A DNA stretch of 63,570 nt, the filler included, from Platydemus manokwari (Eukaryota), in NCBI GenBank assembly GCA_037951405.1. It is 5 parts of 5 records of this genome, joined end to end, with 100 filler letters (N's around TTAATTAATTAA, not from the genome) between each part and the next. Parts side by side here need not be neighbours in the genome. Positions count along the whole stretch, not along the records: positions 15,855 to 27,589 come from JBBMOY010494442.1; 4 more parts are not named here. One strand, given 5' to 3'. Below the pieces are notes generated by a model, which saw nothing but the letters and a program-made list of their open reading frames with translations, made no database searches and had not been told where the DNA came from. Positions 15,855 through 27,589 of this stretch are shown here, piece after piece. The position numbers and the translations under genes were made by a program. Position 1 is the stretch's first letter. Each line of letters begins with the position of its first letter.

Positions 15855-16630
15855 ACTTTGAATATTTAATATCGACTTAATTTCATTATTTATTGATTTT
15901 AATTTTATAAAATAAAATAAAATTTAAAATAAAAATTTATTCATTATCACTTTTTATTTGTTGTGATGTGAGTAGTTGACATTCGAATCAGTACCTTGAA
16001 ATTATATTAAGAAATATTGGACTGAAAACGTGTTTGGAATTGAAATGAATGATTTTAGTCGTAAATAATGTGTATCAAGTGACTGTGAGCCTTATTGTAG
16101 ACTTAATTTTGATTTCGGGTTGACTATCTGTCATAATTCTTTCGAAATTTAGAAAACATGAAAATCGATCAGAAATTGTTTGACAATCATTAGTTAGGGT
16201 TTGTAAAGAAATAATATTGAAATTGACAACGATTTGATCACAGGAATTCGCGAAAGGAATTGTTAGGAAATTAATTAAAAATGTGAGTAATTGGGATTCG
16301 AAACTGTGCCGTAAGATATTATTAATAAATAATTGAGTGACAATGTGATTAAAAATGATTTCTATTTTTGTCTACAATTTTATTTTCTACAAGCGCTATA
16401 ACTGGCATTACTTCGATTTAAAAATTTGATAAACATTTAGACGTAAAATAAAATTATAAATTGTCACTCAATTTGTTTTAATAAATATAAAAATGTAAAA
16501 CAGAATGTTTAAGGGGAACTATAAGCAGTTTGGTTTAACTATTTTACAACGAAATCAGCATGAAATGTTTTAACTTTTACAGTTGAGAGATTGTTTTAAA
16601 TTATTTAATAAGCGCATGTTTTTAAATTAT

Positions 16631-16670
16631 TAATAACAATAACAATAACAATAACAATAACAATAACAAT
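16631..16670. repeat. (AATAAC)n microsatellite, ~6 units
   Basis: Read directly. Confidence 0.9.
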
Positions 16671-17615
16671 ATCACTTTTCTATATGAATATAAATAATTT
16701 TTTGAATAAAAGATTTCTAAAATATCACAATTCGTTGATTTTATCAAAGCCATGAACAATTATTAAAATATCAGAACACTTTTATATCAATGTCAAGCGG
16801 TGGTTCGAATCCCAGATTGTTCACATTTTTATTGATTTTCCAACAATTCTTCTCACATATTGTTATGATAAAAAAAATTGTATCAACTAAAATATTACAC
16901 TCAAAGTCTCAGCAATAACAACAGCGAATCTTTTTACAATTCAGAAAATCACTTAAGACAAAATCAGCACCTGAAAATCAAATACAGAATGAAAAGTAAT
17001 GAAAAAGATTGATGATTAAAATCACACATAAGCTAGGCACTCGAGCTTCTTTTATAGTCCTATTGGTTGTGTATGTGATGTCACGGATCTTCGTTTTCCA
17101 TTTTGGTGAATTTGTTTGTGGATTGATTTACTTGAGTTTTTCCTTATAGCTCAAGTAATATTTCAGCTTGCTGCCATTTGGAGGTATGCACCTGTTGATT
17201 CGTAGCTTCTAAATATGATTTAACAGTAGAACGACTCTGATTGGTTAACATTGGTTTTCATCGGTTCTATGTGTATTAACCTTTTTCGGATTCTTTGGCT
17301 GGTTCTTGTGACTCTTCTCATTGATTGGTGATGTACTCAACAGAATTAATAAACCCGTAATATAGGATTGGGTGATTTTATCTTATATTTTTTGATAAGT
17401 CTTCAATTTCGAATTCTGATGGTCATCGAAGCAATCTAGCTAGTTTCATTGATCAAAAATAATGAACTACAAGTTAATTTAGATTTTCTTAAAAATTTTG
17501 AAAATAACATTTGATGTCCAGATGCAAATATTCTCAATCAATCAATAAATATCCTATTTCATATGATTTCTATTCAGTTATCGATTTTAAGTTTAGTATC
17601 TGTTCAGTGATAAAT

Positions 17616-17837
17616 AAAATGTAAAGATTTATGTTGGATATTTGTATTGCATGATTATTCACTTCCTAACACCAGAACCCGGGTTGGAGAACAACTGTTA
17701 TCGGATCCGGCATTACAGTTGTTCGCCGACAAGTGCTGGTCGATTAGGTTGCGATATAATCGTGTAACAATGCAAATATCCAATATTTCATAAATCCGGC
17801 TCTCACGTAGTTGAGTTACAGACGCGCCACGTCCAGC
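17616..17837 (-). ncRNA. 7SL/SRP-like Alu-domain RNA, copy A (~220 nt, rod-like body, shortened helix-3 loop)
   Basis: 5' GCTGGACGTGGCGCGTCTGTAACTCAACTACGTGAGAGC; nested stems GATTTATG/CATAAATC, TTGGATATTTG/CAAATATCCAA, GATTAT/ATAATC, CCTAA/TTAGG, ACCAG/CTGGT, AACAACTGT/ACAGTTGTT; ends TTTACATTTT. Confidence 0.75.
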
Positions 17838-17911
17838 CATTTTCCAATTCTATATTTATTAACTTCAATTAAATGATAATCGCGTCTACTTACAACTATT
17901 AGTAGATAATT
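17838..17911 (-). promoter_or_regulatory. Putative external Pol III promoter of copy A (upstream box -74..-48, TATA-like about -24..-17)
   Basis: AATTATCTACTAATAGTTGTAAGTAGA ... TAATAAAT at the same spacing in all four full copies. Confidence 0.6.
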
Positions 17912-18555
17912 TGAACATTATTTTTTATTAGATGCTATTGAACTATTTTTTCACAAATAAATAAAAATTTTATTTCAAATTATTTAATTTATGTCAAATT
18001 CAATCATTTTGTAAAAATAAAATCATTCTTAACTTTTTGTAAAGAACAAAATCGAAATCGACATTGATTTGATCACAGAATTTAATTAAAAATGCGAATA
18101 ACTGGGATTCGAATCTGTGACTTAAAATTATGTTAAGAAATATTGGACTGAAAATTTGAATTATCATCTGAAGCTGTGATGACAAGTTGTGATGACAAGA
18201 CTAGAGAAGCGATATACAATAATTGATAAAAAATATGAGCAGCCAAGAATACGAACCGGTTTTTCTTAAATGAATCAATACATTCATGCTAATGGATTGA
18301 ATGATTTGAGGTTATATTCTTTGATAAATCTACAATTTTGAATGCTGATGGTAATCGAAACAATCTGGCTAGATTCATTGAACAAAAATAATGAACTACA
18401 AGTTAATTTAGATTTTTATGATTATTTTATAAATAACATTTGGTGTTCATATTCTCAATAAATCAATAGATATCCTGTTCCATATGATTTCTATGCATTT
18501 ATCGATTTTAAGTTTAAATATATTTTCAAAAACATTTTTAGTGATAAACAAAATG

Positions 18556-18767
18556 AAAAGATTTATGTTGTGATGGAGCACATGAATATCCCTTCCTACA
18601 CCAGCCCCAGGTTCTAAACTTCTATCTTCTATCTTTGTAGATGTTTGTCTTTACCATGGTCTGTTTGTATAGCTTGTGGGATAATCATATAGCATTGTAT
18701 TTATTCGTCACTTCATAAATCCGGCTCTCAGGTAGTTGAGTTACAGACGCGCACCACCACGCCCAGC
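18556..18767 (-). ncRNA. 7SL/SRP-like Alu-domain RNA, copy B (~212 nt)
   Basis: 5' GCTGGGCGTGGTGGTGCGCGTCTGTAACTCAACTACCTGAGAGC; loop-loop complement GGTGGT/ACTACC; stems GATTTATG/CATAAATC, GTGA/TCAC, TATCCC/GGGATA, CTATAC/GTGTAG; ends TTTT. Confidence 0.8.
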
Positions 18768-18841
18768 CATTTTCCTATTCTATATTTATTAACTTCAATT
18801 GAATAATAATCGCTTCTACTTACAATTAAAAGTAGATAATT
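18768..18841 (-). promoter_or_regulatory. Putative external Pol III promoter of copy B
   Basis: AATTATCTACTTTTAATTGTAAGTAGA at -74..-48; TAATAAAT near -24. Confidence 0.6.
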
Positions 18842-19699
18842 TTAAATTTATTTTTAATTAAATGTTATTGTTCATAAATTATAGTGAAATCGATAAAATA
18901 GTTCACTTGTAAATTATTGCAGAATGAACTCTAAATTGATCATTGATTGACTCCAGTTCAAATCAATGGTTTTGTAAATCTTTAGAAATATGAGAAATGA
19001 ATTCGCGAGTTTTTCATTGAATATTATCAAGCATACAAATGTTATAAAATTACATTTGTTATCTGATTGATTTTCAAATTTGATATCTTTAACTTGAAAT
19101 AAATCAATAAATCAATATTAAAAATTTTATTAAATCAAATATAAAATTTATTGACTAAGAATCGTATTGAAGTAACGCCAAAAAATTTATTATTGATTAT
19201 TCAAAGAGGACATTTGCTCGTTTCCTTGTAAGATGATGCGTGAAAGCGTTACTGATGATGAGAAAATAATGTTAACTGGTACTAAAGGAAAAGATACAAT
19301 TCCAATAGTGGATCAGACACGTGAAAAGCTACCATAACAAGGTACAATAAAAGACACGAAAGAATGGAGGAGCATAAATAAATAATTGATTTGGATTGTG
19401 ATGACACGTGCTTATAATTTTGAATGATCCAATTAATTATCAAATCATCAGCTATTTCACATTTGATAAAATTAAAAATACTAAATAAAACTCGAGTGAT
19501 AATGGAACAATAGACCTAGAATCAATAAACACGATATTAATTGATTTATTGAATTATCATTAAATATTTGAGTGAGATTGGTGCAGTAATTCATCAGCCT
19601 TTATCAAGCGTAGGCGTTTTTCTGAAAAAGAGAAAAACAAAAAATACAATAAAATATGGCGTCTATCAAACAATTGGAAAATTATATCAAGCCATCATA

Positions 19700-20560
19700 A
19701 TCCATTCAATCAATTTCTTAATACAATTCTCTCCTTAAATAATTTTCTTTCATTTTCTATTATATCAGGATATCTTGAAACCAATTTCAAATATATACAA
19801 GAAAGAATTTGGTTGTTTATGATTTCAGTGTCTTTTCCTATTTGTTCTTCTTTTGGAATATTTACACATTCTTTATCAGCAACAATTATAAAAGGAACTG
19901 GTATTTGATGTTTATGTTTTAAAATTTTAACATGTTGTTGTAAGGGAAACTTTGTTCATTTCCATTATCTTTCATATTTGGCCGAATTATTTTTGGTTAT
20001 CTTTTTCCATCTTTTCCACATATTATTTGGTGATTTATAGAAACATTTTCTTTTACAAAGTAAGAACAACATTTATCACAGACATCTAATTTATCATTTT
20101 GTTTTCATTTATAATTCAATTCTCCACCCATAAATTGTTTAAAATTTTAATGAGAGCATGATGGGTTTTACCATTGTTTTTCTAAATGTAACAACTTGAT
20201 ATCTTGATTATATTCTTTATTTTTAGAAATATATTTTAGAAATAATTTATAGTTTTTTTTCCTCCTTTCTTCTTTCCTTCCTTAATTAGGCATTTTATTT
20301 CATCAGCATTGATTTTAAATTATTGTTCTTTTCATATATTTTTTATTTCACTAATGGGTATTGGAAATGTTACTCCATCTATATTTAATTAGTCAAAATG
20401 TTTTGTGAATTGATATAAATAATTCTCTACATCAACTATATTATTAGAGACAAAAGATAAAGATACATAATTACTTCAGGATAGTACATTTATGTTTGAA
20501 ATGTTTACTTTTATGCCCCTAATTCAAATATATTCTAACCACTGCCTTTAACCTTTAACA
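19700..20560 (-). mobile_element. Decayed Polinton/Maverick-type DNA polymerase B N-terminal region
   Basis: Broken minus frames LNIDGVTFPIPISEIK..EKNNNLKIN and KHQIPVPFIIVADKECV resemble the Polinton pPolB FP..I..FEK.N and VPFVIYADFE motifs. Confidence 0.65.
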
Positions 20561-21676
20561 AATCATCATCTAGTTTCTGTGGAAATTCATTGGTGGATTC
20601 TAATGATTGATCTGCATTCATTGGATCTTCTCTTATTTTCGATGTCTGATCTGAACTTAATGGTATTGTAATGCAATCATATTCATTTGTATTGTGATTT
20701 ATATTTTACAGGATAATCTTAACATTTATTTGTTCTATAATACTACTTCTTTGAATACAGAAAACTGAAGGGAAATTTCGGAAGGTTATCGATTTACGGA
20801 TATTGAAAAATTAGAAATATTTTTATTGGAACCGAATAGATGTTATTTTTGTTCAGAGAGTAATATTCGAGGAAATTGTTTCCAGAATATTTGTACACTC
20901 ATCAACTTTAATTGTAAAATATTCGAGGACGTTGCTCTCTAAAATCGGTAAATCAAAAACGTTTAGTGTAGTGAGTCTGTAACTGTTTATTGCGCCTCTT
21001 GTATTGTAACATAGGTCAGTAGTAGATAAAAATTGTTAGCGAACTGGTTATGTGATTTGTTGTTAACTTGAATATAAGATTGGACTCTTGATTGTGATAT
21101 TGCAATTTAAATAAACGATCGTAAAGTTGTTTTAAAAATAAATCTTACTATTCAACCGCCATCTTTTTGGAGTTAGATAGACAGAATCTAATGAGTATTT
21201 ATCGCGATCTACAGCAGGTAGACTCAATAAATTTGTGATATACTTTTTTCAACATGTTGGTGTAAAAGGAATTTGTACTGGAGCAAAACATGGAAGTGCT
21301 TTCTTGGTTAATAATTATGAAACAAAATCTATAAATATGTGTGTGTGTTGATAAAAGCTCTTATCCTTATTTAAGAAAGAAACGAAATTCTATATCTACA
21401 AAACCTAAATTATTAATATGTGAATTTAATAAACCACCAAATAATGGGTTTTCTATTTACTTAATTAATAAATTACTTAAAGATTTAAAGACTATATAAA
21501 ATTATTTAATTTATTGGTAATATATTTTCTAATAGATCATCAAAGAGTAATCTCCTGGAATTTATAATATTTAATAAAAGTTTATCCGATAATGAAAGTT
21601 CAGACATCAAAGATTTTTTTTACAGAAAATTATCGTGATTTGGAGTATTACTAAATTCTATATTAAATTAAATAAA

Positions 21677-22140
21677 ATGGAAGATCAAAAACTTTACCCT
21701 AACCTTGATAATTTTAATGATTCAATTGCCCCACCAGATTCTAAAACGATGAGTCCATCTTTTCTAAGCTATGAAAACGATAAGTGAAAAATAAATATTA
21801 ACATCTTTAAAATAGAAAAATTTTGGAATAAGAAAACAGTTTTAGAAGAATTATCAAATCATTATGATAAATAAAAAATTAAATGAAGTAAAGTAGATAA
21901 TGGTTTAAAGTATTCAATTATCATATATGGTTGTGTTTTAGCGGTTGTGTCAATTATTTTACCAACTCTTTCTGATGTTGGAATTTAACTTATAATTACT
22001 TTATATTGTGGAGTTGGAATTGGTTTATTCACGATAATAAAATCAATTATTGGGGAAACATTTCATATTGGTTTAAGCAGTAAAAAGAATAAAAATGTAT
22101 AAAGAAGTTTGCGAAGTGATAAAACATGATATTTCAATGC
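21677..22140 (+). mobile_element. Decayed Polinton-like small ORF (LYP.L / hydrophobic segments)
   Basis: MEDQKLYPNLDNFNDSIAPP followed by broken helical and hydrophobic segments; lies next to the pPolB remnant. Confidence 0.4.
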
Positions 22141-22502
22141 AATATTTCTTAATCTAATTTTAGGGCACAGTTTCGAATCCCAACGAATCAAATTTTTAAT
22201 TAATTTCTAATTTAAAACGAATTCCTGTGATCAAATCACTCTCAATTTCGATATTATTTCTTTTCAAAAAGTTAAGAATAATTGTCCTACATAAAAACAG
22301 TGCTACTAGAAGGATTTTGAGCAACAACCTATATATTACATCGGTTGTCAAAATATTTTAACTCGTAGATGTGGTTTGCTTCTTGGTTTATTATATTATT
22401 ATACATCAGTGCAACATCCTTGTTGGACTTAAGAAACGATTTCATATTAACTATTAAGTTTTCAAAAATTAAAATTCTTTTCGATTTGGAAATAATTTTT
22501 TC

Positions 22503-22858
22503 AAAAGATTTGTGTTGATTTGAATTGCATGATATCAGCTTAGACTTCGTTTTATATTTTTTTTCGGTTTTCCTCTTTCGATCTGACATAACTTTAGTCG
22601 ATCTACTCGATTGTTTTCCGTTTTTGGTTTATTGCTTTTTTTTGTATTTTTTCATTTTATAATTTTTTTTTTTTTTATTTTTGAATTTTTTTTTTTTTTT
22701 TGATTTTTTGATTTTTTTGATTTTATAATATTTTTTCAACTCAGTTCCAAACAGAATATCATGGTGAATATGATTTAACAATATATCACCCATAATTCAA
22801 ACTTCACAAATCCAGCTCTCAGGTAGTTGAGTTACAGACGCGCACCGCCACGTCCAGC
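22503..22858 (-). ncRNA. 7SL/SRP-like Alu-domain RNA, copy C (~356 nt, A-rich interior)
   Basis: 5' GCTGGACGTGGCGGTGCGCGTCTGTAACTCAACTACCTGAGAGC; stems GATTTGTG/CACAAATC, TTTGAATT/AATTCAAA, CATGATAT/ATATCATG; ~120-nt A-rich tract; first TTTT only at the 3' end. Confidence 0.75.
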
Positions 22859-22932
22859 TGAATTTTGTTTAGCTATTTATAAATTTCAACTAAGCGATGA
22901 TGTGTTCTATTGACAACTGAAAGTAGATAATT
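22859..22932 (-). promoter_or_regulatory. Putative external Pol III promoter of copy C
   Basis: AATTATCTACTTTCAGTTGTCAATAGA at -74..-48; TTATAAAT near -24. Confidence 0.6.
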
Positions 22933-23234
22933 TTCAATTGATTTTTATTACTTGACAAAAAAAATCACAACTAATACAATTCAAAATCACTAATTTAATA
23001 TAAATACACGCACGAATATTAGATGAATACTGAAGATTAAGTTGGATGTAAAAAACTACTAATAGAAGGATGATGTCGAATTATTGTATGTATATGAAAC
23101 ATCTTGAATACAATACGAATACATCGAGAATACTTTATATAAGCGCTGAGACACTCACATTTATATTGATTTTTAAATAATTCTTCTCACATATTTTTAT
23201 GAAAAAATAATTGGCCAAAGGTAAAAAAGGGTAC

Positions 23235-23587
23235 CAAAATAAATTTTTTAATTTGTTTAAGGGTATTGCGAAAATTTATATAGTTTATTTAATTATATTC
23301 TTTAAAAAACATTTATTTAATTTTTTATTAAAGTATTTAAGAAGAATTTTAGTTGTTTGAAATAAAATATTAAATAAACTAGATCTTAAAAATCTCCTAA
23401 AATTTGATTATTTGAAAAAATGAAAATAGAAGGTCGAATTGCAATTTATTGAAAATTAGCGAGGATCCTTTTTCTAACACACGAAGCAAATTGAGATGTC
23501 ATCTAAATTTTTACAATAACTCATAAAAATAACCAATGATATTATTAAACATATCTGTGATTAACTAACTCGATTTATAATTATAAA
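23235..23587. repeat. Dispersed ~360-bp AT-rich repeat, copy 2
   Basis: Colinear with 2680-3036. Confidence 0.8.
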
Positions 23588-24525
23588 AAATTAAATTTAA
23601 AAACTTAAATTTAAAAACATATAAAGTTAAGTTATAAAATTATTTCAGGCGCTAAATTTCATAATAACGAAAGTAGGTCAAAGGTCTAATTTTCTTAACT
23701 TAAGCCAAATAATTAATAATTTCGATATTTTTCATTTACCAAACATCATCAGTGATCGAAAAAGTATGTCTGCTGAAAAATAGATATTTTAAAAATTTAA
23801 AGATTAGTGAGAGAGAAGTAATTTGAATAATCATCTGAAGGTGTGATGACAAGATAAGTGAATCAATACACAGTAATTCATAAAAAATATGAGCAATCTA
23901 GAATACAAACCGGTTCCTCTACAATTTCTAATTTTGCTATCTTCATCGATTAAGAATAAAGTACTCTAGTTAATTCAGTATTTCTCAAGAATTTTATAAA
24001 TAACATTTCGTTACCAGATGAAAATATTTTTCATGGGCCAATGAATTTAATTCCTAATATACTTTAACTCATGCATTCAGAATGTCAATCAATTTATTTG
24101 TCAGTTGTTTGTTTTAATTACTGATATTCTGACTATAAAATGTTAGTTATTGACTGCGAAAAAATAAATATATCTAGAACTATAAATGAAATTATTCCAA
24201 ATATTTTTTGATGTTAAATTGATTTATCGGGTTTCACTTCTCAATCAATCCAAGTACTTTTGTTTTAATTATTAAATGATCGGTTTTTAAAAAAATTTTT
24301 CACAATGTGACAAAATTACGATAGCGAACGAATATTTAAAGGTGTTGTTAGAAGTGAGATGTGATTTATAATAGCTCTTTTACCTCTACTGATATACAAT
24401 ATAAATATAGTATACATATAATATCAATAAAATTTTATACTCATAGTATGTTTCAACGTACCATCAGTCTTACTCGTACTAGTACGTATGAGTAGATTTT
24501 ATATTTTAAAGTAAGATTTATAAAA

Positions 24526-24732
24526 ATGAATCCAAATAAAATTCGATACGATGTTTATACTGGTGATGAATTGTCAGTAATAGATATTAACATAAGATAT
24601 CCAGACCAAAAAAACCAATTAGAGTCTGCTTGTGATCCAAGACTAGGAGCAAGTAATGTAGGTTTATGTAATCTAAGTGAGAAAAAGGTTATTATTATAC
24701 ACCCTAAAATAATAAAAAAAGATACCCCCTAA
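24526..24732 (+). pseudogene. Fragment resembling the N-terminus of an RNA polymerase largest (beta-prime/RPB1-like) subunit
   Basis: KIRYDVYTGDELSVIDINIRYPDQKNQLESACDPRLGASNVGLC resembles the I.FG..S..E....I..P....DPRLG....C start of RPB1-family subunits; stops after 68 codons. Confidence 0.5.
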
Positions 24733-24816
24733 TAAGTGCATGTTTTCAAATTAAGAAACGATAACAAATAAGTTTTTATAAATTAAAATTCTATTCGATT
24801 TGGAAATAATTTATTC

Positions 24817-25106
24817 AAAAGATTTGTGTTGATTTGAATTGCTTGATATCAGCTTAGAATTTCGATACACTTTTAATATCTTTATGTGCTTTCAGCATGG
24901 TGGCAGAAAGTACATCTGTATTTTTTTCTATTCAATTCCAAGCTAAACATCATGGTGAATATGATTTAGCAATAGAACCCTCACGGCGCTAACCTTTCGT
25001 AAGTCATCATGGTGAATATGAACTATTATTTAATCACCCTTCATTCAAACTTCACAAATCCAGCTCTCAGGTAGTTGAGTTACAGACGCGCACCACCACG
25101 TCCAGC
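24817..25106 (-). ncRNA. 7SL/SRP-like Alu-domain RNA, copy D (~290 nt)
   Basis: 5' GCTGGACGTGGTGGTGCGCGTCTGTAACTCAACTACCTGAGAGC; stems GATTTGTG/CACAAATC, TTTGAAT/ATTCAAA, TAGCTTGGAATT/AATTCTAAGCTG, GATGTACTTT/AAAGTGTATC; ends TTTT. Confidence 0.8.
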
Positions 25107-25180
25107 TGATTTTTGTTTAGCAATTTATTAATTTCAGTTAAACCATAATGTGCTCTATTGACACCTGATATTAGATAATT
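25107..25180 (-). promoter_or_regulatory. Putative external Pol III promoter of copy D
   Basis: AATTATCTAATATCAGGTGTCAATAGA at -74..-48; TAATAAAT near -24. Confidence 0.6.
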
Positions 25181-26879
25181 TTTAATTGATTTTTATTAGA
25201 TGACCAATTTGAAAAAAACTATCCTTCTCAGTTCACCATTGATACACCAGAAATAAGAAAATCGATTATATCAATGTAGACCTTGGATGTTGGAACAATG
25301 TTTTATTATCATGAGATTGAAATATAATTATTCACTAGATAAGAAGTTTTGATTTTACAAATATTTCTGTGCACTTAAACGACAGAGGAGTAAAATCAAT
25401 TTTTTAACAGCTTTTCAATCAAAACCGATAAATAAGAGGAATAAGAGGATGTTGAGGTAAATAACTAATGATCTTACCACTATTAATGCTTACTGATCCT
25501 CTTATTGGTGTTGGATTGAAAAATCTTCTCAAAATAAAATCAATATCAAAGTGATCTTTCAGTAATTTACTGGGTATATGACTTTCGAAGATTTGAGCAA
25601 TTTGACTGGCTTGATCTCTTACGCAACTGAATTTTGTTGCTAGTGGTTTAATAATGAGTAAGTCTACTGATGTTGTGAGCCTATTTATATGGTTGTTTAT
25701 TTGAGTGCAACTTCCTTATCAAATAGACGTATTATTCAAATGTACATTATGTGAATAATTCACATTATCAGGTTCAGGAGTACAATTACAAGAGTTTCGA
25801 GTTTAGTTCAAACTTGCCTTGAGGTTCAGCTCAAGCGTAACAGCAAAATATTAGGTGCTCAAACAAGTAATGACAGTTATCGTCCATAAGATCATCACAT
25901 TTTATCCAAGTTCAAATTGGAAGATAAATTGATTATTTCTTTGTAAGAGAGACTCATACTGACAAGATATAGAGTGTTTTAAAGCTTGTTATGATTTATA
26001 TAACAAAATCTATTGTACAAGGTTGCACTAAAATCTGTGATTGGAGAAACCATTTCAGTGAGTACGATAGATGAGCAATTAACAGTTCTTATCAAAATCG
26101 TTACAATCCAATTGTTATCAAATGCAATTGTCTAAAATGACAAACCCAGTGACGTGAGACTTGTAGTAAAAAACCGTTCATTAATATACCCAGCAAATGA
26201 AGCGTCTTGTCAAGGGCTTCACTATATGGACTTGGATGTAAATTGTTTATTTACAAAGTGTGAGACATTGCAATTCCAATATTTCGTAACATAATCATAA
26301 GGCACAGATTCGAATCTCAAACTACCCACATTTTTAAAATATTGGAAATTAGATGTTAATATTATTTTCATTATCTATATCTCCAAGAATTAAACTCTTA
26401 AAATTAGGTGTTAATGGAATATTATTTGCATCAGCTGAATAAGCATTATTATCGAATTCAATAATTAAATATTGAATTACATTGATTTTCATAAATAAGA
26501 AATCCATACCATTTAAAATCTTTAATTCGAAAGATAATATGTATGGACTTGAGTATGATATTTCCCAATCGAATTTTAATAAATTAGGATTTGCATATGC
26601 AGATTTTGGTTTATTTTCTTGAATATTTTTCTTTGAATTTACATTATTTATATTTTCTTGTTTATTTTTAATACCTTTTAAATTTTAATTTCCCTCTTCT
26701 ATTGCTAATTGTGGTTTTTACTGATTTCAAAAAGATGTAGGAAATAAGACGATAGCTTGATTTAACAAAATTTTTGAATATTGTTGTTCTTCAGCTTTAC
26801 TTACTTTTATTGATGTCAAAACCATTTATTCATAGCCATTCTTTAAAACTAAATCGATTTAATTTTTCAGTTACAACAT

Positions 26880-27589
26880 AACAATTGAAATGAATGATTA
26901 TAATCTTAAACAATAATGTGTAAATAATGTGTATCAAGTGAATGTGAGACTTATTGTAGTTTAAACTACGACTTCGGGTTAATTATCTGTCATAATTCTT
27001 TCTAAATATGAAAATATGAATCTCGATCAGAAATTGTTTGACAATCATTTGTAAAGAAATAATATCGAAATCGACATTGATTTAATCACAGAAATTCGTG
27101 AAAGGAATTGTTAGGAAATTAACTAAAAATGTGATTAGTTGGGATTCGAACCTGTGACTTAGAATAATATTAAGAAATATTGGACTGAAAATGTGAATGG
27201 TCATCTGAAGCTGTGATGGCAAGACTAGAGAAGCGATATACAGTTATTTATAAAAATTATTGGTAGCCAAGAATACGAACCAGTTCCTCTTAAACGAATC
27301 AATACATTCATGTTAATAGATTGAGTTAGTTGAGCATATTTTATTTGATAAGTCTACAATTTTGAATGCTGATGGTCATCGAAGTAATCTAGCTAGATTC
27401 ATTGATCAAAAATAATGAACTACAAGTTAATTTAGATTTTCTTAAAAATTTTGAAAATAACATTTGGTGTGCAGATACAAATATTCTCAATCAATCAATA
27501 AATATCCTGTTCCATATGATTTCTATTCAGTTATCGATTTTAAGTTTAGTATCTGTTCAGTGATAAATAAAATGTAAAGATTTATGTTG
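26880..27589. repeat. Repeat module forming the 3' flank of A/B/E-type 7SL-like genes; contains a B-box
   Basis: Homologous pieces at ~15970-16320, 17370-17636, 18000-18570, 23825-24030 and inverted at 22140-22290; GGTTCGAATCCC on the minus strand at 27141-27152. Confidence 0.85.
27569..27589 (-). ncRNA. 3' end of a fifth 7SL-like copy (E), cut by the assembly gap
   Basis: CAACATAAATCTTTACATTTT and its flank are nearly identical to the 3' end of copy A. Confidence 0.65.

What the first reader, a model, noticed from the sequence alone, without database searches (positions are those of the whole stretch)
17616..25106. Compensatory base-pair change defines two subfamilies of the 7SL-like RNA
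Seen: the closing helix is GATTTATG/CATAAATC in A and B (E keeps the CATAAATC side) and GATTTGTG/CACAAATC in C and D. That is an A-U to G-C swap across 150-300 nt. The next helix changes sequence yet still pairs: TTGGATATTTG/CAAATATCCAA in A, GTGA/TCAC in B, TTTGAAT/ATTCAAA in C and D. The UGAA/AACA junction is kept in all four. Upstream and downstream flanks sort into the same two groups. Inference: structure is under selection after duplication.
Basis: seen in the sequence. Interest (0 to 1): 0.7.

Follow-up and report, generated by a model that had tools for sequence, protein, structure and literature searches.

The report
Cluster of truncated 7SL-like RNA genes

Summary
The closing helix reads GATTTATG/CATAAATC in copies A and B, with one arm in E, and GATTTGTG/CACAAATC in C and D. 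The flanks sort into the same two groups.

The RNAs lie on the minus strand. Each starts with a complete SRP-RNA Alu 5' domain. The Metazoa_SRP model matches B and D at E about 1e-7 to 2e-8, which is below the Rfam gathering score. Each RNA closes with the 3' strand of helix 5 followed by a U-run. A 28-nt upstream element sits at -47 to -74 and a TATA-like block at -24 to -13 in all four copies.

No copy has a recognisable S domain (helices 6 and 8). Unrelated, hairpin-forming bodies of 141-285 nt take its place.

In the 71-column Alu module no substitution breaks a pair. The subfamily-diagnostic changes form one certain compensatory pair (A-U to G-C). A second (G-C to A-U) counts only if transcription starts one base upstream. 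The module evolves more slowly than its flanks.

Inside the bodies, pair-breaking changes outnumber pair-keeping ones.

Best reading: a cluster of Pol III-type genes for S-domain-less 7SL derivatives. Decaying 7SL pseudogenes are the main rival. I could obtain no expression data and no other genomic copies.

The parts
17616..17838 (-). Copy A. RNA from GGCUGG (17838) to CAUAAAUC (ends 17626), then UUU-ACA-UUUU (to 17616). It has a 5-nt deletion in the helix 3 loop and a C>G change in the helix 4 loop. Its 150-nt body forms a near-perfect rod.
   Evidence: Sequence; model R1 scores 79 bits; fold -78.5 kcal/mol, z -7.0; no Rfam SRP hit.
18556..18768 (-). Copy B. Intact Alu 5' domain, a 141-nt body related to A's (59% identity), closing helix, then UCUUUU.
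   Evidence: Metazoa_SRP 40.1 bits, E 1.2e-7, with 124 S-domain model positions skipped; R1 89.7 bits; fold z -3.45; a 367-nt contig of run X1 covers 18387-18753 with no difference.
22503..22859 (-). Copy C. Intact Alu 5' domain and a 285-nt body that includes about 170 nt of A-rich sequence in RNA sense. Closing helix GGAUUUGUG/CACAAAUCU, then UUUU.
   Evidence: R1 89.3 bits; fold z -3.6; no Rfam SRP hit.
24817..25107 (-). Copy D. Intact Alu 5' domain. Its 219-nt body shares its two ends with C's body. Closing helix GGAUUUGUG/CACAAAUCU, then UUUU.
   Evidence: Metazoa_SRP 42.7 bits, E 2.2e-8, local to the ends; R1 90.2 bits; fold z -3.1.
27579..27589 (-). Copy E. Only the last 11 nt of the RNA (CAACAUAAAUC) remain, because the piece ends here. 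The flank below it (27289-27578) is 90% identical to A's.
   Evidence: Sequence; repeat family D1.
17885..17912 (-). Upstream element AAATTATCTACT...AGTTGT.A.TAGA at -47 to -74 of copy A. The same element sits at 18815-18842 (B), 22906-22933 (C) and 25154-25181 (D), always at the same distance.
   Evidence: Four matches against 0 expected; alignment A1.
17851..17862 (-). TATA-like block TTAATAAATATA at -24 to -13 of copy A. Equivalent blocks lie at 18781-18792 (B), 22872-22883 (C) and 25120-25131 (D).
   Evidence: Alignment A1. Reading it as a promoter is inference.
17336..17615 (-). Flank downstream of the RNA, shared by the A/B/E group (also 18265-18555 and 27289-27578). It is part of the duplicated DNA unit, not of the RNA.
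   Evidence: Repeat family D1.

Best explanation
The piece carries a head-to-tail cluster of small-RNA genes on the minus strand. They descend from the SRP RNA (7SL) gene by DNA-level duplication. Each copy keeps the Alu module: helices 2, 3 and 4, the UGUAA turn, and the base of helix 5 closed by the 3' end. Each has lost the S domain that binds SRP19 and SRP54. In its place sits a lineage-specific, self-pairing body.

Inferred mechanism:
- RNA polymerase III starts about 47 nt downstream of a conserved upstream element and about 13-24 nt downstream of a TATA-like block.
- It stops at the U-run directly after the closing helix.
- The RNA folds into an Alu domain on top of a rod. The Alu domain would bind SRP9/14, as it does in SRP RNA, Alu, B1 and BC200 RNAs.
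- Without helix 8 the RNA cannot act in signal-peptide recognition.

Selection acts on the Alu module and probably on the promoter, not on the body. The cellular role of such an Alu particle is not known. Translation control or titration of SRP9/14 are the precedents.

Shown here: strand, homology of the ends, absence of the S domain, conservation pattern, and the covarying pairs. Inferred: transcription, the polymerase, protein binding and function.
For: - Strand and homology: Metazoa_SRP matches on the minus strand at E 2e-8 (D) and 1e-7 (B), with the Alu 5' domain aligned at posterior probability near 1.
- Pair conservation: in the 71-column module none of 24 pairs is broken in any copy. 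The four subfamily-diagnostic columns are exactly two pairs, G-C<->A-U and A-U<->G-C. Random placement would give that with P = 3e-4. If the 5'-most base is not transcribed, P is about 0.03 for the single pair.
- Slower divergence: module mismatches against flank mismatches give Fisher p = 0.0009 for C/D and 0.006 for B/D. Identity is 84-98% in the 5' domain and 91-100% in the 3' strand. It is 63-80% upstream and 37-59% in the body; unrelated sequence gives 53%.
- Promoter-like signals: the upstream element sits at a fixed distance in 4 of 4 copies with 0 expected.
- Terminator: a U-run follows the closing helix in all copies and no TTTT lies inside any sense strand. About 24 would be expected at the background rate.
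- Plus-strand reading is unlikely: C and D would be cut short by many T-runs (56 and 5 AAAA runs in RNA sense).
- Origin by DNA duplication: copies share upstream and downstream flanks and one orientation.
- Copy number: summed contig depth of 175-200 over the core and promoter, against 11-27 for single contigs, hints at further copies in the genome.
Against: - There is no expression evidence. The only public run that holds the stretch is kept as contigs, its kind is not on record, and no holder is on record as RNA.
- The absence of TTTT is weak once each copy's own T-poor composition is allowed for (combined P about 0.03).
- The rods fold about as well on the antisense strand, so G-U pairs give no strand signal.
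- Copy A has a 5-nt deletion in the helix 3 loop and a change in the helix 4 loop. Both loops form the tertiary contact in known Alu domains, so A may be decaying.
- A versus B differ almost as much in the module as in the upstream flank.
- The TATA-like block lies closer to the presumed start than in well-studied type 3 promoters.
- The covariation is one or two events on a single branch. It could have been inherited from functional parent genes.
- The organism is unknown, and so is whether a canonical SRP RNA gene exists elsewhere in the genome.
Confidence: 0.5

Rival explanations
1. The copies are dead 7SL pseudogenes made by segmental duplication. Deletions and insertions destroyed the S domain. 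The Alu module looks conserved because the copies are young or because gene conversion with functional 7SL genes homogenises them. The compensatory pairs arose in functional parent genes and were inherited.
For: - The bodies change freely, and more pairs break than are kept.
- Copy A carries lesions in both tertiary-contact loops.
- Copy D has a 57-nt internal duplication or insertion and C has a 170-nt A-rich expansion.
- Avoidance of TTTT is only marginal after correcting for composition.
- The rods give no strand signal.
- No RNA data exist.
Against: - C and D differ at 1 of 71 module columns but at about 15% of aligned flank columns. Youth alone does not explain that.
- Gene conversion would have to be confined to 57 + 14 nt on either side of an unrelated body.
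- Promoter blocks and terminators are intact in all four copies.
- Every body still pairs end to end better than shuffled sequence does (z -2.5 to -5.6).
Confidence: 0.3
2. These are the organism's working SRP RNAs, with an S domain so divergent that covariance models miss it.
For: - The Alu domain, closing helix and terminator are canonical.
- A and B are about 210 nt long and 42% GC in a 27% GC region.
- Unusual SRP RNAs are known in some eukaryotic lineages (PMC4605306, title and abstract only).
Against: - No helix 8 motif and no GNAR-capped hairpin was matched in any copy, even when A and C were searched alone with lax filters.
- The bodies of the two subfamilies are unrelated (37-46% identity). 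A region that binds SRP54 should not be.
- A metazoan-type Alu domain normally comes with a canonical S domain (general knowledge of the family).
Confidence: 0.07
3. They are copies of a 7SL-derived SINE (Alu/B1-like retroposon).
For: - The central part of 7SL is missing, as in all known 7SL-derived SINEs (PMC13023118).
- C has an internal A-rich tract.
- Depth hints at multiple copies.
Against: - At least 100 nt upstream and 60-300 nt downstream are shared between copies.
- There is no 3' A-tail or simple-repeat tail.
- The RNA ends in the 3' strand of helix 5 plus a T-run.
- All copies lie in one orientation within 10 kb.
Confidence: 0.05
4. It is a DNA-level palindromic repeat, or a plus-strand transcript, with no RNA-structural meaning.
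For: - The rods fold equally well on both strands.
- A's apex is a near-perfect DNA palindrome.
- A T-run also follows the conserved block on the plus strand.
Against: - The 5' domain is not a palindrome and matches the SRP model on the minus strand only.
- The compensatory pairs are 40-300 nt apart.
- A plus-strand Pol III transcript of C or D would meet many T-runs.
Confidence: 0.03

Closest known systems
SRP RNA / 7SL RNA (Rfam RF00017 Metazoa_SRP, clan CL00003)
   Same: Alu 5' domain with helices 2, 3 and 4 and the UGUAA turn; helix 5 base closed by the 3' end; a 3' U-run.
   Different: Helix 6 and helix 8 (the S domain) are absent, scores fall below the gathering cut-off, and unrelated bodies sit in place of the S domain.
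Monomeric 7SL-derived SINE precursors (FLAM, pB1; also hagfish Ebu1-1 and shrew-mole Urop)
   Same: 7SL ends kept and central region lost. PMC13023118 states that all known 7SL-derived SINEs arose after a central deletion of about 183 nt, and that independent origins are very rare.
   Different: These copies spread as DNA segments together with their promoter and flanks. They have no A-tail or LINE-derived tail, and the centre is replaced rather than simply deleted.
BC200 RNA (primates) and 4.5SH RNA (rodents)
   Same: Genes for small RNAs that derive from 7SL through its Alu part. BC200 has an Alu domain followed by an A-rich stretch, as copy C does. 4.5SH genes are amplified as tandem DNA repeats. 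(From my own knowledge.)
   Different: Those RNAs arose from retroposed Alu or B1 elements in mammals. Here the 3' end pairs back onto the 5' strand of helix 5, the genome region is 27% GC, and the Alu sequence is not of the mammalian type.
Vault RNA and Y RNA gene clusters
   Same: Only the layout is similar: several Pol III paralogues in a row, with conserved paired ends and variable middles. (From my own knowledge.)
   Different: There is no sequence or structural relation; here the conserved end is an SRP Alu domain.

Membership tests
SRP RNA (7SL), Rfam RF00017 | Alu 5' domain: helices 2, 3 and 4 with the UGUAA turn | tested here: met
   cmscan aligns model positions 1-47 with high posterior probability in B and D. 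The same 57 nt are 84-98% identical in all four copies. A has a 5-nt loop deletion.
SRP RNA (7SL), Rfam RF00017 | Helix 5 closed by the 3' end, followed by a U-run | tested here: met
   A 9-bp helix GGAUUU[A/G]UG / CA[U/C]AAAUCU is present in all folds and is followed by UUUU.
SRP RNA (7SL), Rfam RF00017 | S domain: helix 8 with a GNAR loop and the SRP54-binding loops; helix 6 | tested here: not met
   The model's S-domain positions are skipped (124 in B, 209 in D). A and C searched alone give no SRP match.
SRP RNA (7SL), Rfam RF00017 | Score at or above the curated gathering cut-off (70 bits) | tested here: not met
   No hits at gathering. The best scores are 42.7 and 40.1 bits.
7SL-derived SINE (Alu/B1 type) | 7SL ends with the central region missing | tested here: met
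   Here the centre is replaced by 141-285 nt of other sequence.
7SL-derived SINE (Alu/B1 type) | Retroposed copies: 3' A-rich or LINE-derived tail, target-site duplications, unrelated flanks | tested here: not met
   Flanks are shared between copies. The RNA ends in a T-run and has no tail.
7SL-derived SINE (Alu/B1 type) | High copy number, dispersed through the genome | not testable with these tools
   Only this 11.7-kb piece is available. Contig depth hints at roughly ten copies, but the tool warns that depth is not a copy number.
Pol III gene with an upstream (type 3-like) promoter | Conserved upstream element plus a TATA-like box at fixed distance, and a T-run terminator | tested here: inconclusive
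   The element at -47 to -74 and the A/T block at -24 to -13 are conserved in 4 of 4 copies, and a T4 run follows the RNA. The TATA spacing is shorter than in textbook cases, and neither the start site nor the polymerase was tested.
Expressed non-coding RNA | A transcript of the predicted strand and size | not testable with these tools
   No public run on record as RNA holds the stretch. The one run laid consists of contigs.

The most novel reading that the evidence does not exclude
An AT-rich, evidently non-mammalian eukaryote has independently evolved a small family of expressed 'Alu-domain RNAs'. These would be Pol III genes that keep the SRP9/14-binding end of 7SL under selection while freely swapping the rest. 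They would be either a new class of Alu-type regulatory particles or the gene-stage precursor of a 7SL-derived SINE, an origin so far reported only in supraprimates, hagfish and a shrew mole.
Probability: 0.3. Interest if true: 0.65.

Novelty: new variant of a known kind. Interest (0 to 1): 0.45.

Why it matters
7SL RNA has given rise to other RNAs very rarely. The literature lists supraprimates, hagfish and one shrew mole (PMC13023118), and each origin began with loss of the central S domain.

This cluster shows the same loss at the gene stage. The promoter and terminator are still attached, the region is 27% GC, and the Alu sequence is not of the mammalian type.

If the copies are expressed, they offer a natural case of an Alu domain kept for its own sake. 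They would also be a system for asking what free Alu particles do outside mammals. If they are silent, they are ordinary pseudogenes, and the compensatory pairs only record selection on their parent genes.

Tried and rejected
- Rfam at gathering thresholds gave nothing. Searching A and C alone with lax filters gave no SRP match.
- Two scans of metagenome contigs and one of viral contigs for the Alu core found 0, 6 and 0 loci. All six loci are chance matches in unrelated contigs of 46-71% GC without any SRP hit. So no relatives were available for a larger covariation test.
- I tried to name the organism from coding content and failed. No ORF with a start codon exceeds 86 aa and the longest stop-free stretch is 111 codons. 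There are no Pfam families and no word-sharing homologue. No exact-product record exists for two ORFs.
- A short ORF at 24526-24732 reminded me of an RNA polymerase N-terminus, but Pfam does not support that.
- A G-U strand-bias test on the rods was inconclusive.
- RNAalifold on MAFFT pairwise alignments misaligned the bodies. I replaced it with my own pair mapping, which is itself sensitive to the alignment.
- I did not run the count of structure pairs on alignment A5, because it needs a 363-character typed structure string. The same counts were made in a script.


Full report
**What is there.** The piece (15855-27589) is 26.8% GC. It has no tRNA gene and no ORF with a start codon longer than 86 aa. 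Its longest stop-free stretches carry no protein family.

It contains four complete copies and one cut-off copy of a small element.
- GATTTATG...CATAAATC in A (17626-17633 and 17789-17796) and B (18560-18567 and 18714-18721).
- GATTTGTG...CACAAATC in C (22507-22514 and 22805-22812) and D (24821-24828 and 25053-25060).
- One arm in E (27579-27586), just before the piece ends.

A 27-nt core occurs four times with at most one mismatch, against 0 expected. A covariance model built from the four 5' domains scores 79-90 bits on them and no more than 7.6 bits anywhere else in the piece.

**Strand and identity.** The RNA sense is the minus strand. Nothing reaches an Rfam gathering score. At E-value thresholds, Metazoa_SRP matches D (25009-25106, 42.7 bits, E 2.2e-8) and B (18557-18767, 40.1 bits, E 1.2e-7), both on the minus strand.

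The alignment covers helices 2, 3 and 4 and the UGUAA turn at high posterior probability, and it also covers the last nucleotides of helix 5. It skips 124 model positions in B and 209 in D, and those positions are the S domain. A and C give no SRP match even when searched alone. A has a 5-nt deletion in the helix 3 loop and C has a very long body.

So '7SL-like' is correct for the Alu module only. No copy has helix 6 or helix 8, and none can be filed as an SRP RNA.

**Gene-like features (sequence shown, function inferred).** In RNA sense each copy is preceded by a conserved 28-nt element at -47 to -74. It matches 4 times against 0 expected. A TATA-like block TTAATAAATA(TA) lies at -24 to -13.

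Each closing helix is followed directly by UCUUUU. In A and E it is UCUUU-ACA-UUUU. No TTTT lies inside any sense strand, although the local background predicts about 24 over the 1,063 nt. With each copy's own T-poor composition that absence is only marginal (combined P about 0.03).

Read on the plus strand, C and D would contain many T-runs. All copies point the same way and share flanks:
- A, B and E share about 300 nt downstream of the RNA.
- C and D share about 60 nt downstream.
- All four share about 100 nt upstream.

The copies therefore spread as DNA segments, not by retroposition. There is no A-tail and no target duplication around a copy.

**The covariation claim.** I built a 71-column alignment of the module, made of the 5' 57 nt plus the last 14 nt. 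I applied the SRP Alu structure plus the 9-bp closing helix, which gives 24 pairs.
- No pair is broken in any copy.
- Five substitutions fall in paired columns and all keep the pair.
- One of them is an A-U to G-U change in B.
- The other four are the only columns that separate A/B from C/D, and they form two pairs.

The second pairs the base just 5' of GCUGG with the base after GAGAGC. It is G-C in A/B and A-U in C/D (17838/17798, 18768/18723, 22859/22814, 25107/25062).

Four random columns would form two pairs with P = 3e-4. The second pair counts only if transcription starts at that purine. The Rfam model does not include it, although RNAfold predicts it in A and B. Without it, three diagnostic columns include one pair, and I estimate P at about 0.03.

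The module also diverges less than its flanks. C versus D has 1 mismatch in 71 columns against 31 in 204 aligned flank columns (p = 0.0009), and B versus D gives p = 0.006. This supports selection on the Alu module, or gene conversion confined to it.

**The interior.** Bodies are 150 nt (A), 141 nt (B), 285 nt (C) and 219 nt (D). A and B are related (59% identity). C and D share their two ends. The two groups are unrelated to each other (37-46% identity, against 53% for unrelated sequence).

Each body pairs end to end better than shuffled sequence does, with z of -5.6, -2.5, -2.5 and -3.4. That pairing is not held by conserved pairs:
- Reading A's pairs in B gives 23 unchanged, 7 changed but kept, 16 broken and 12 lost to gaps.
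- B read in A, C read in D and D read in C look alike.
- B has lost the partner strand of A's 11-bp helix.

The rods fold as well on the antisense strand. This mapping depends on a sequence alignment, so it is rough.

**Other data.** One public run holds the stretch. It is kept as contigs, its kind is not on record, and no holder is on record as RNA. Laid on 17300-18900, a 367-nt contig confirms B's body exactly. A's body is not covered, which the tool says proves nothing.

Summed depth is about 175-200 over the Alu core and promoter, against 11-27 for single contigs. That hints at further copies elsewhere, perhaps around ten. The tool warns that depth is not a copy number.

Scans of metagenome and viral contigs gave no relatives. 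I could not determine the organism.

**Comparison with what is known.** According to PMC13023118, 7SL-derived SINEs are known only from supraprimates, hagfish and a shrew mole, and all began with a central deletion of about 183 nt. The present copies show the same loss of the centre. They differ in keeping an upstream promoter-like region and a terminator, and in having multiplied as DNA.

They resemble a FLAM or pB1-type RNA at the gene stage. From my own knowledge they also resemble 7SL-derived small-RNA genes such as BC200 and 4.5SH. They are not members of the SRP RNA family as defined by Rfam, nor of the SINEs.

**Verdict.**
- Best reading (0.5): a cluster of Pol III-type genes for S-domain-less 7SL derivatives, whose Alu module is under constraint and whose bodies drift.
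- Main rival (0.3): decaying 7SL pseudogenes whose module is kept similar by youth or gene conversion.

Expression data and a genome-wide family alignment would decide between them.

Noticed in passing
16267-16375, 18078-18186, 27115-27223 (+); inverted at 22132-22208 and 26265-26320: A repeat of about 110 nt carries a tRNA T-arm-like motif (GGGATTCGAA.CTGTG). It lies a few hundred bases downstream of the RNA in copies B, C and E. A's copy lies about 1.3 kb away, beyond an extra ~1-kb stretch that E's flank lacks. ARAGORN finds no tRNA, so it may be a tRNA-derived SINE or a relic.
   Followed up: partly
24948-25021: Copy D has a 17-nt direct repeat (CATCATGGTGAATATGA at 24948-24964 and 25005-25021) around a 40-nt segment. 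That segment includes a GC-rich 30-mer absent from copy C. It is an internal duplication or an insertion with a target-like repeat inside the RNA body.
   Followed up: no
22560-22730: The body of copy C holds about 170 nt of A-rich low-complexity sequence in RNA sense (T-rich on the plus strand). The layout recalls the A-rich linkers of Alu dimers and BC200.
   Followed up: no
17798/17838, 18723/18768, 22814/22859, 25062/25107: A second covarying position pair separates the subfamilies (G-C in A/B, A-U in C/D). It extends helix 2 by one base pair and is real only if transcription starts one base upstream of GCUGG.
   Followed up: yes
17375-17458 and 27343-27411 (-): Weak snoR27-like matches (27.4 and 24.5 bits, gathering score 41) lie in the flank shared by A and E. 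The D box is poor, so these are probably chance.
   Followed up: no
16376-17335: Copy A's downstream flank carries about 1 kb that is absent from the otherwise collinear flank of copy E (16038-16375 plus 17336-17635 against 26883-27589). This is an insertion or a replacement after duplication.
   Followed up: no
21676-22100 (+) and 19640-20700 (-): Some frames run on for 140-400 codons with only scattered TAA, TAG or TGA stops and no frameshift. They may be decayed coding sequence. The stop density is close to random for this base composition, and no protein family was found in the pieces I tested from the second stretch; none from 21676-22100 was scanned.
   Followed up: partly
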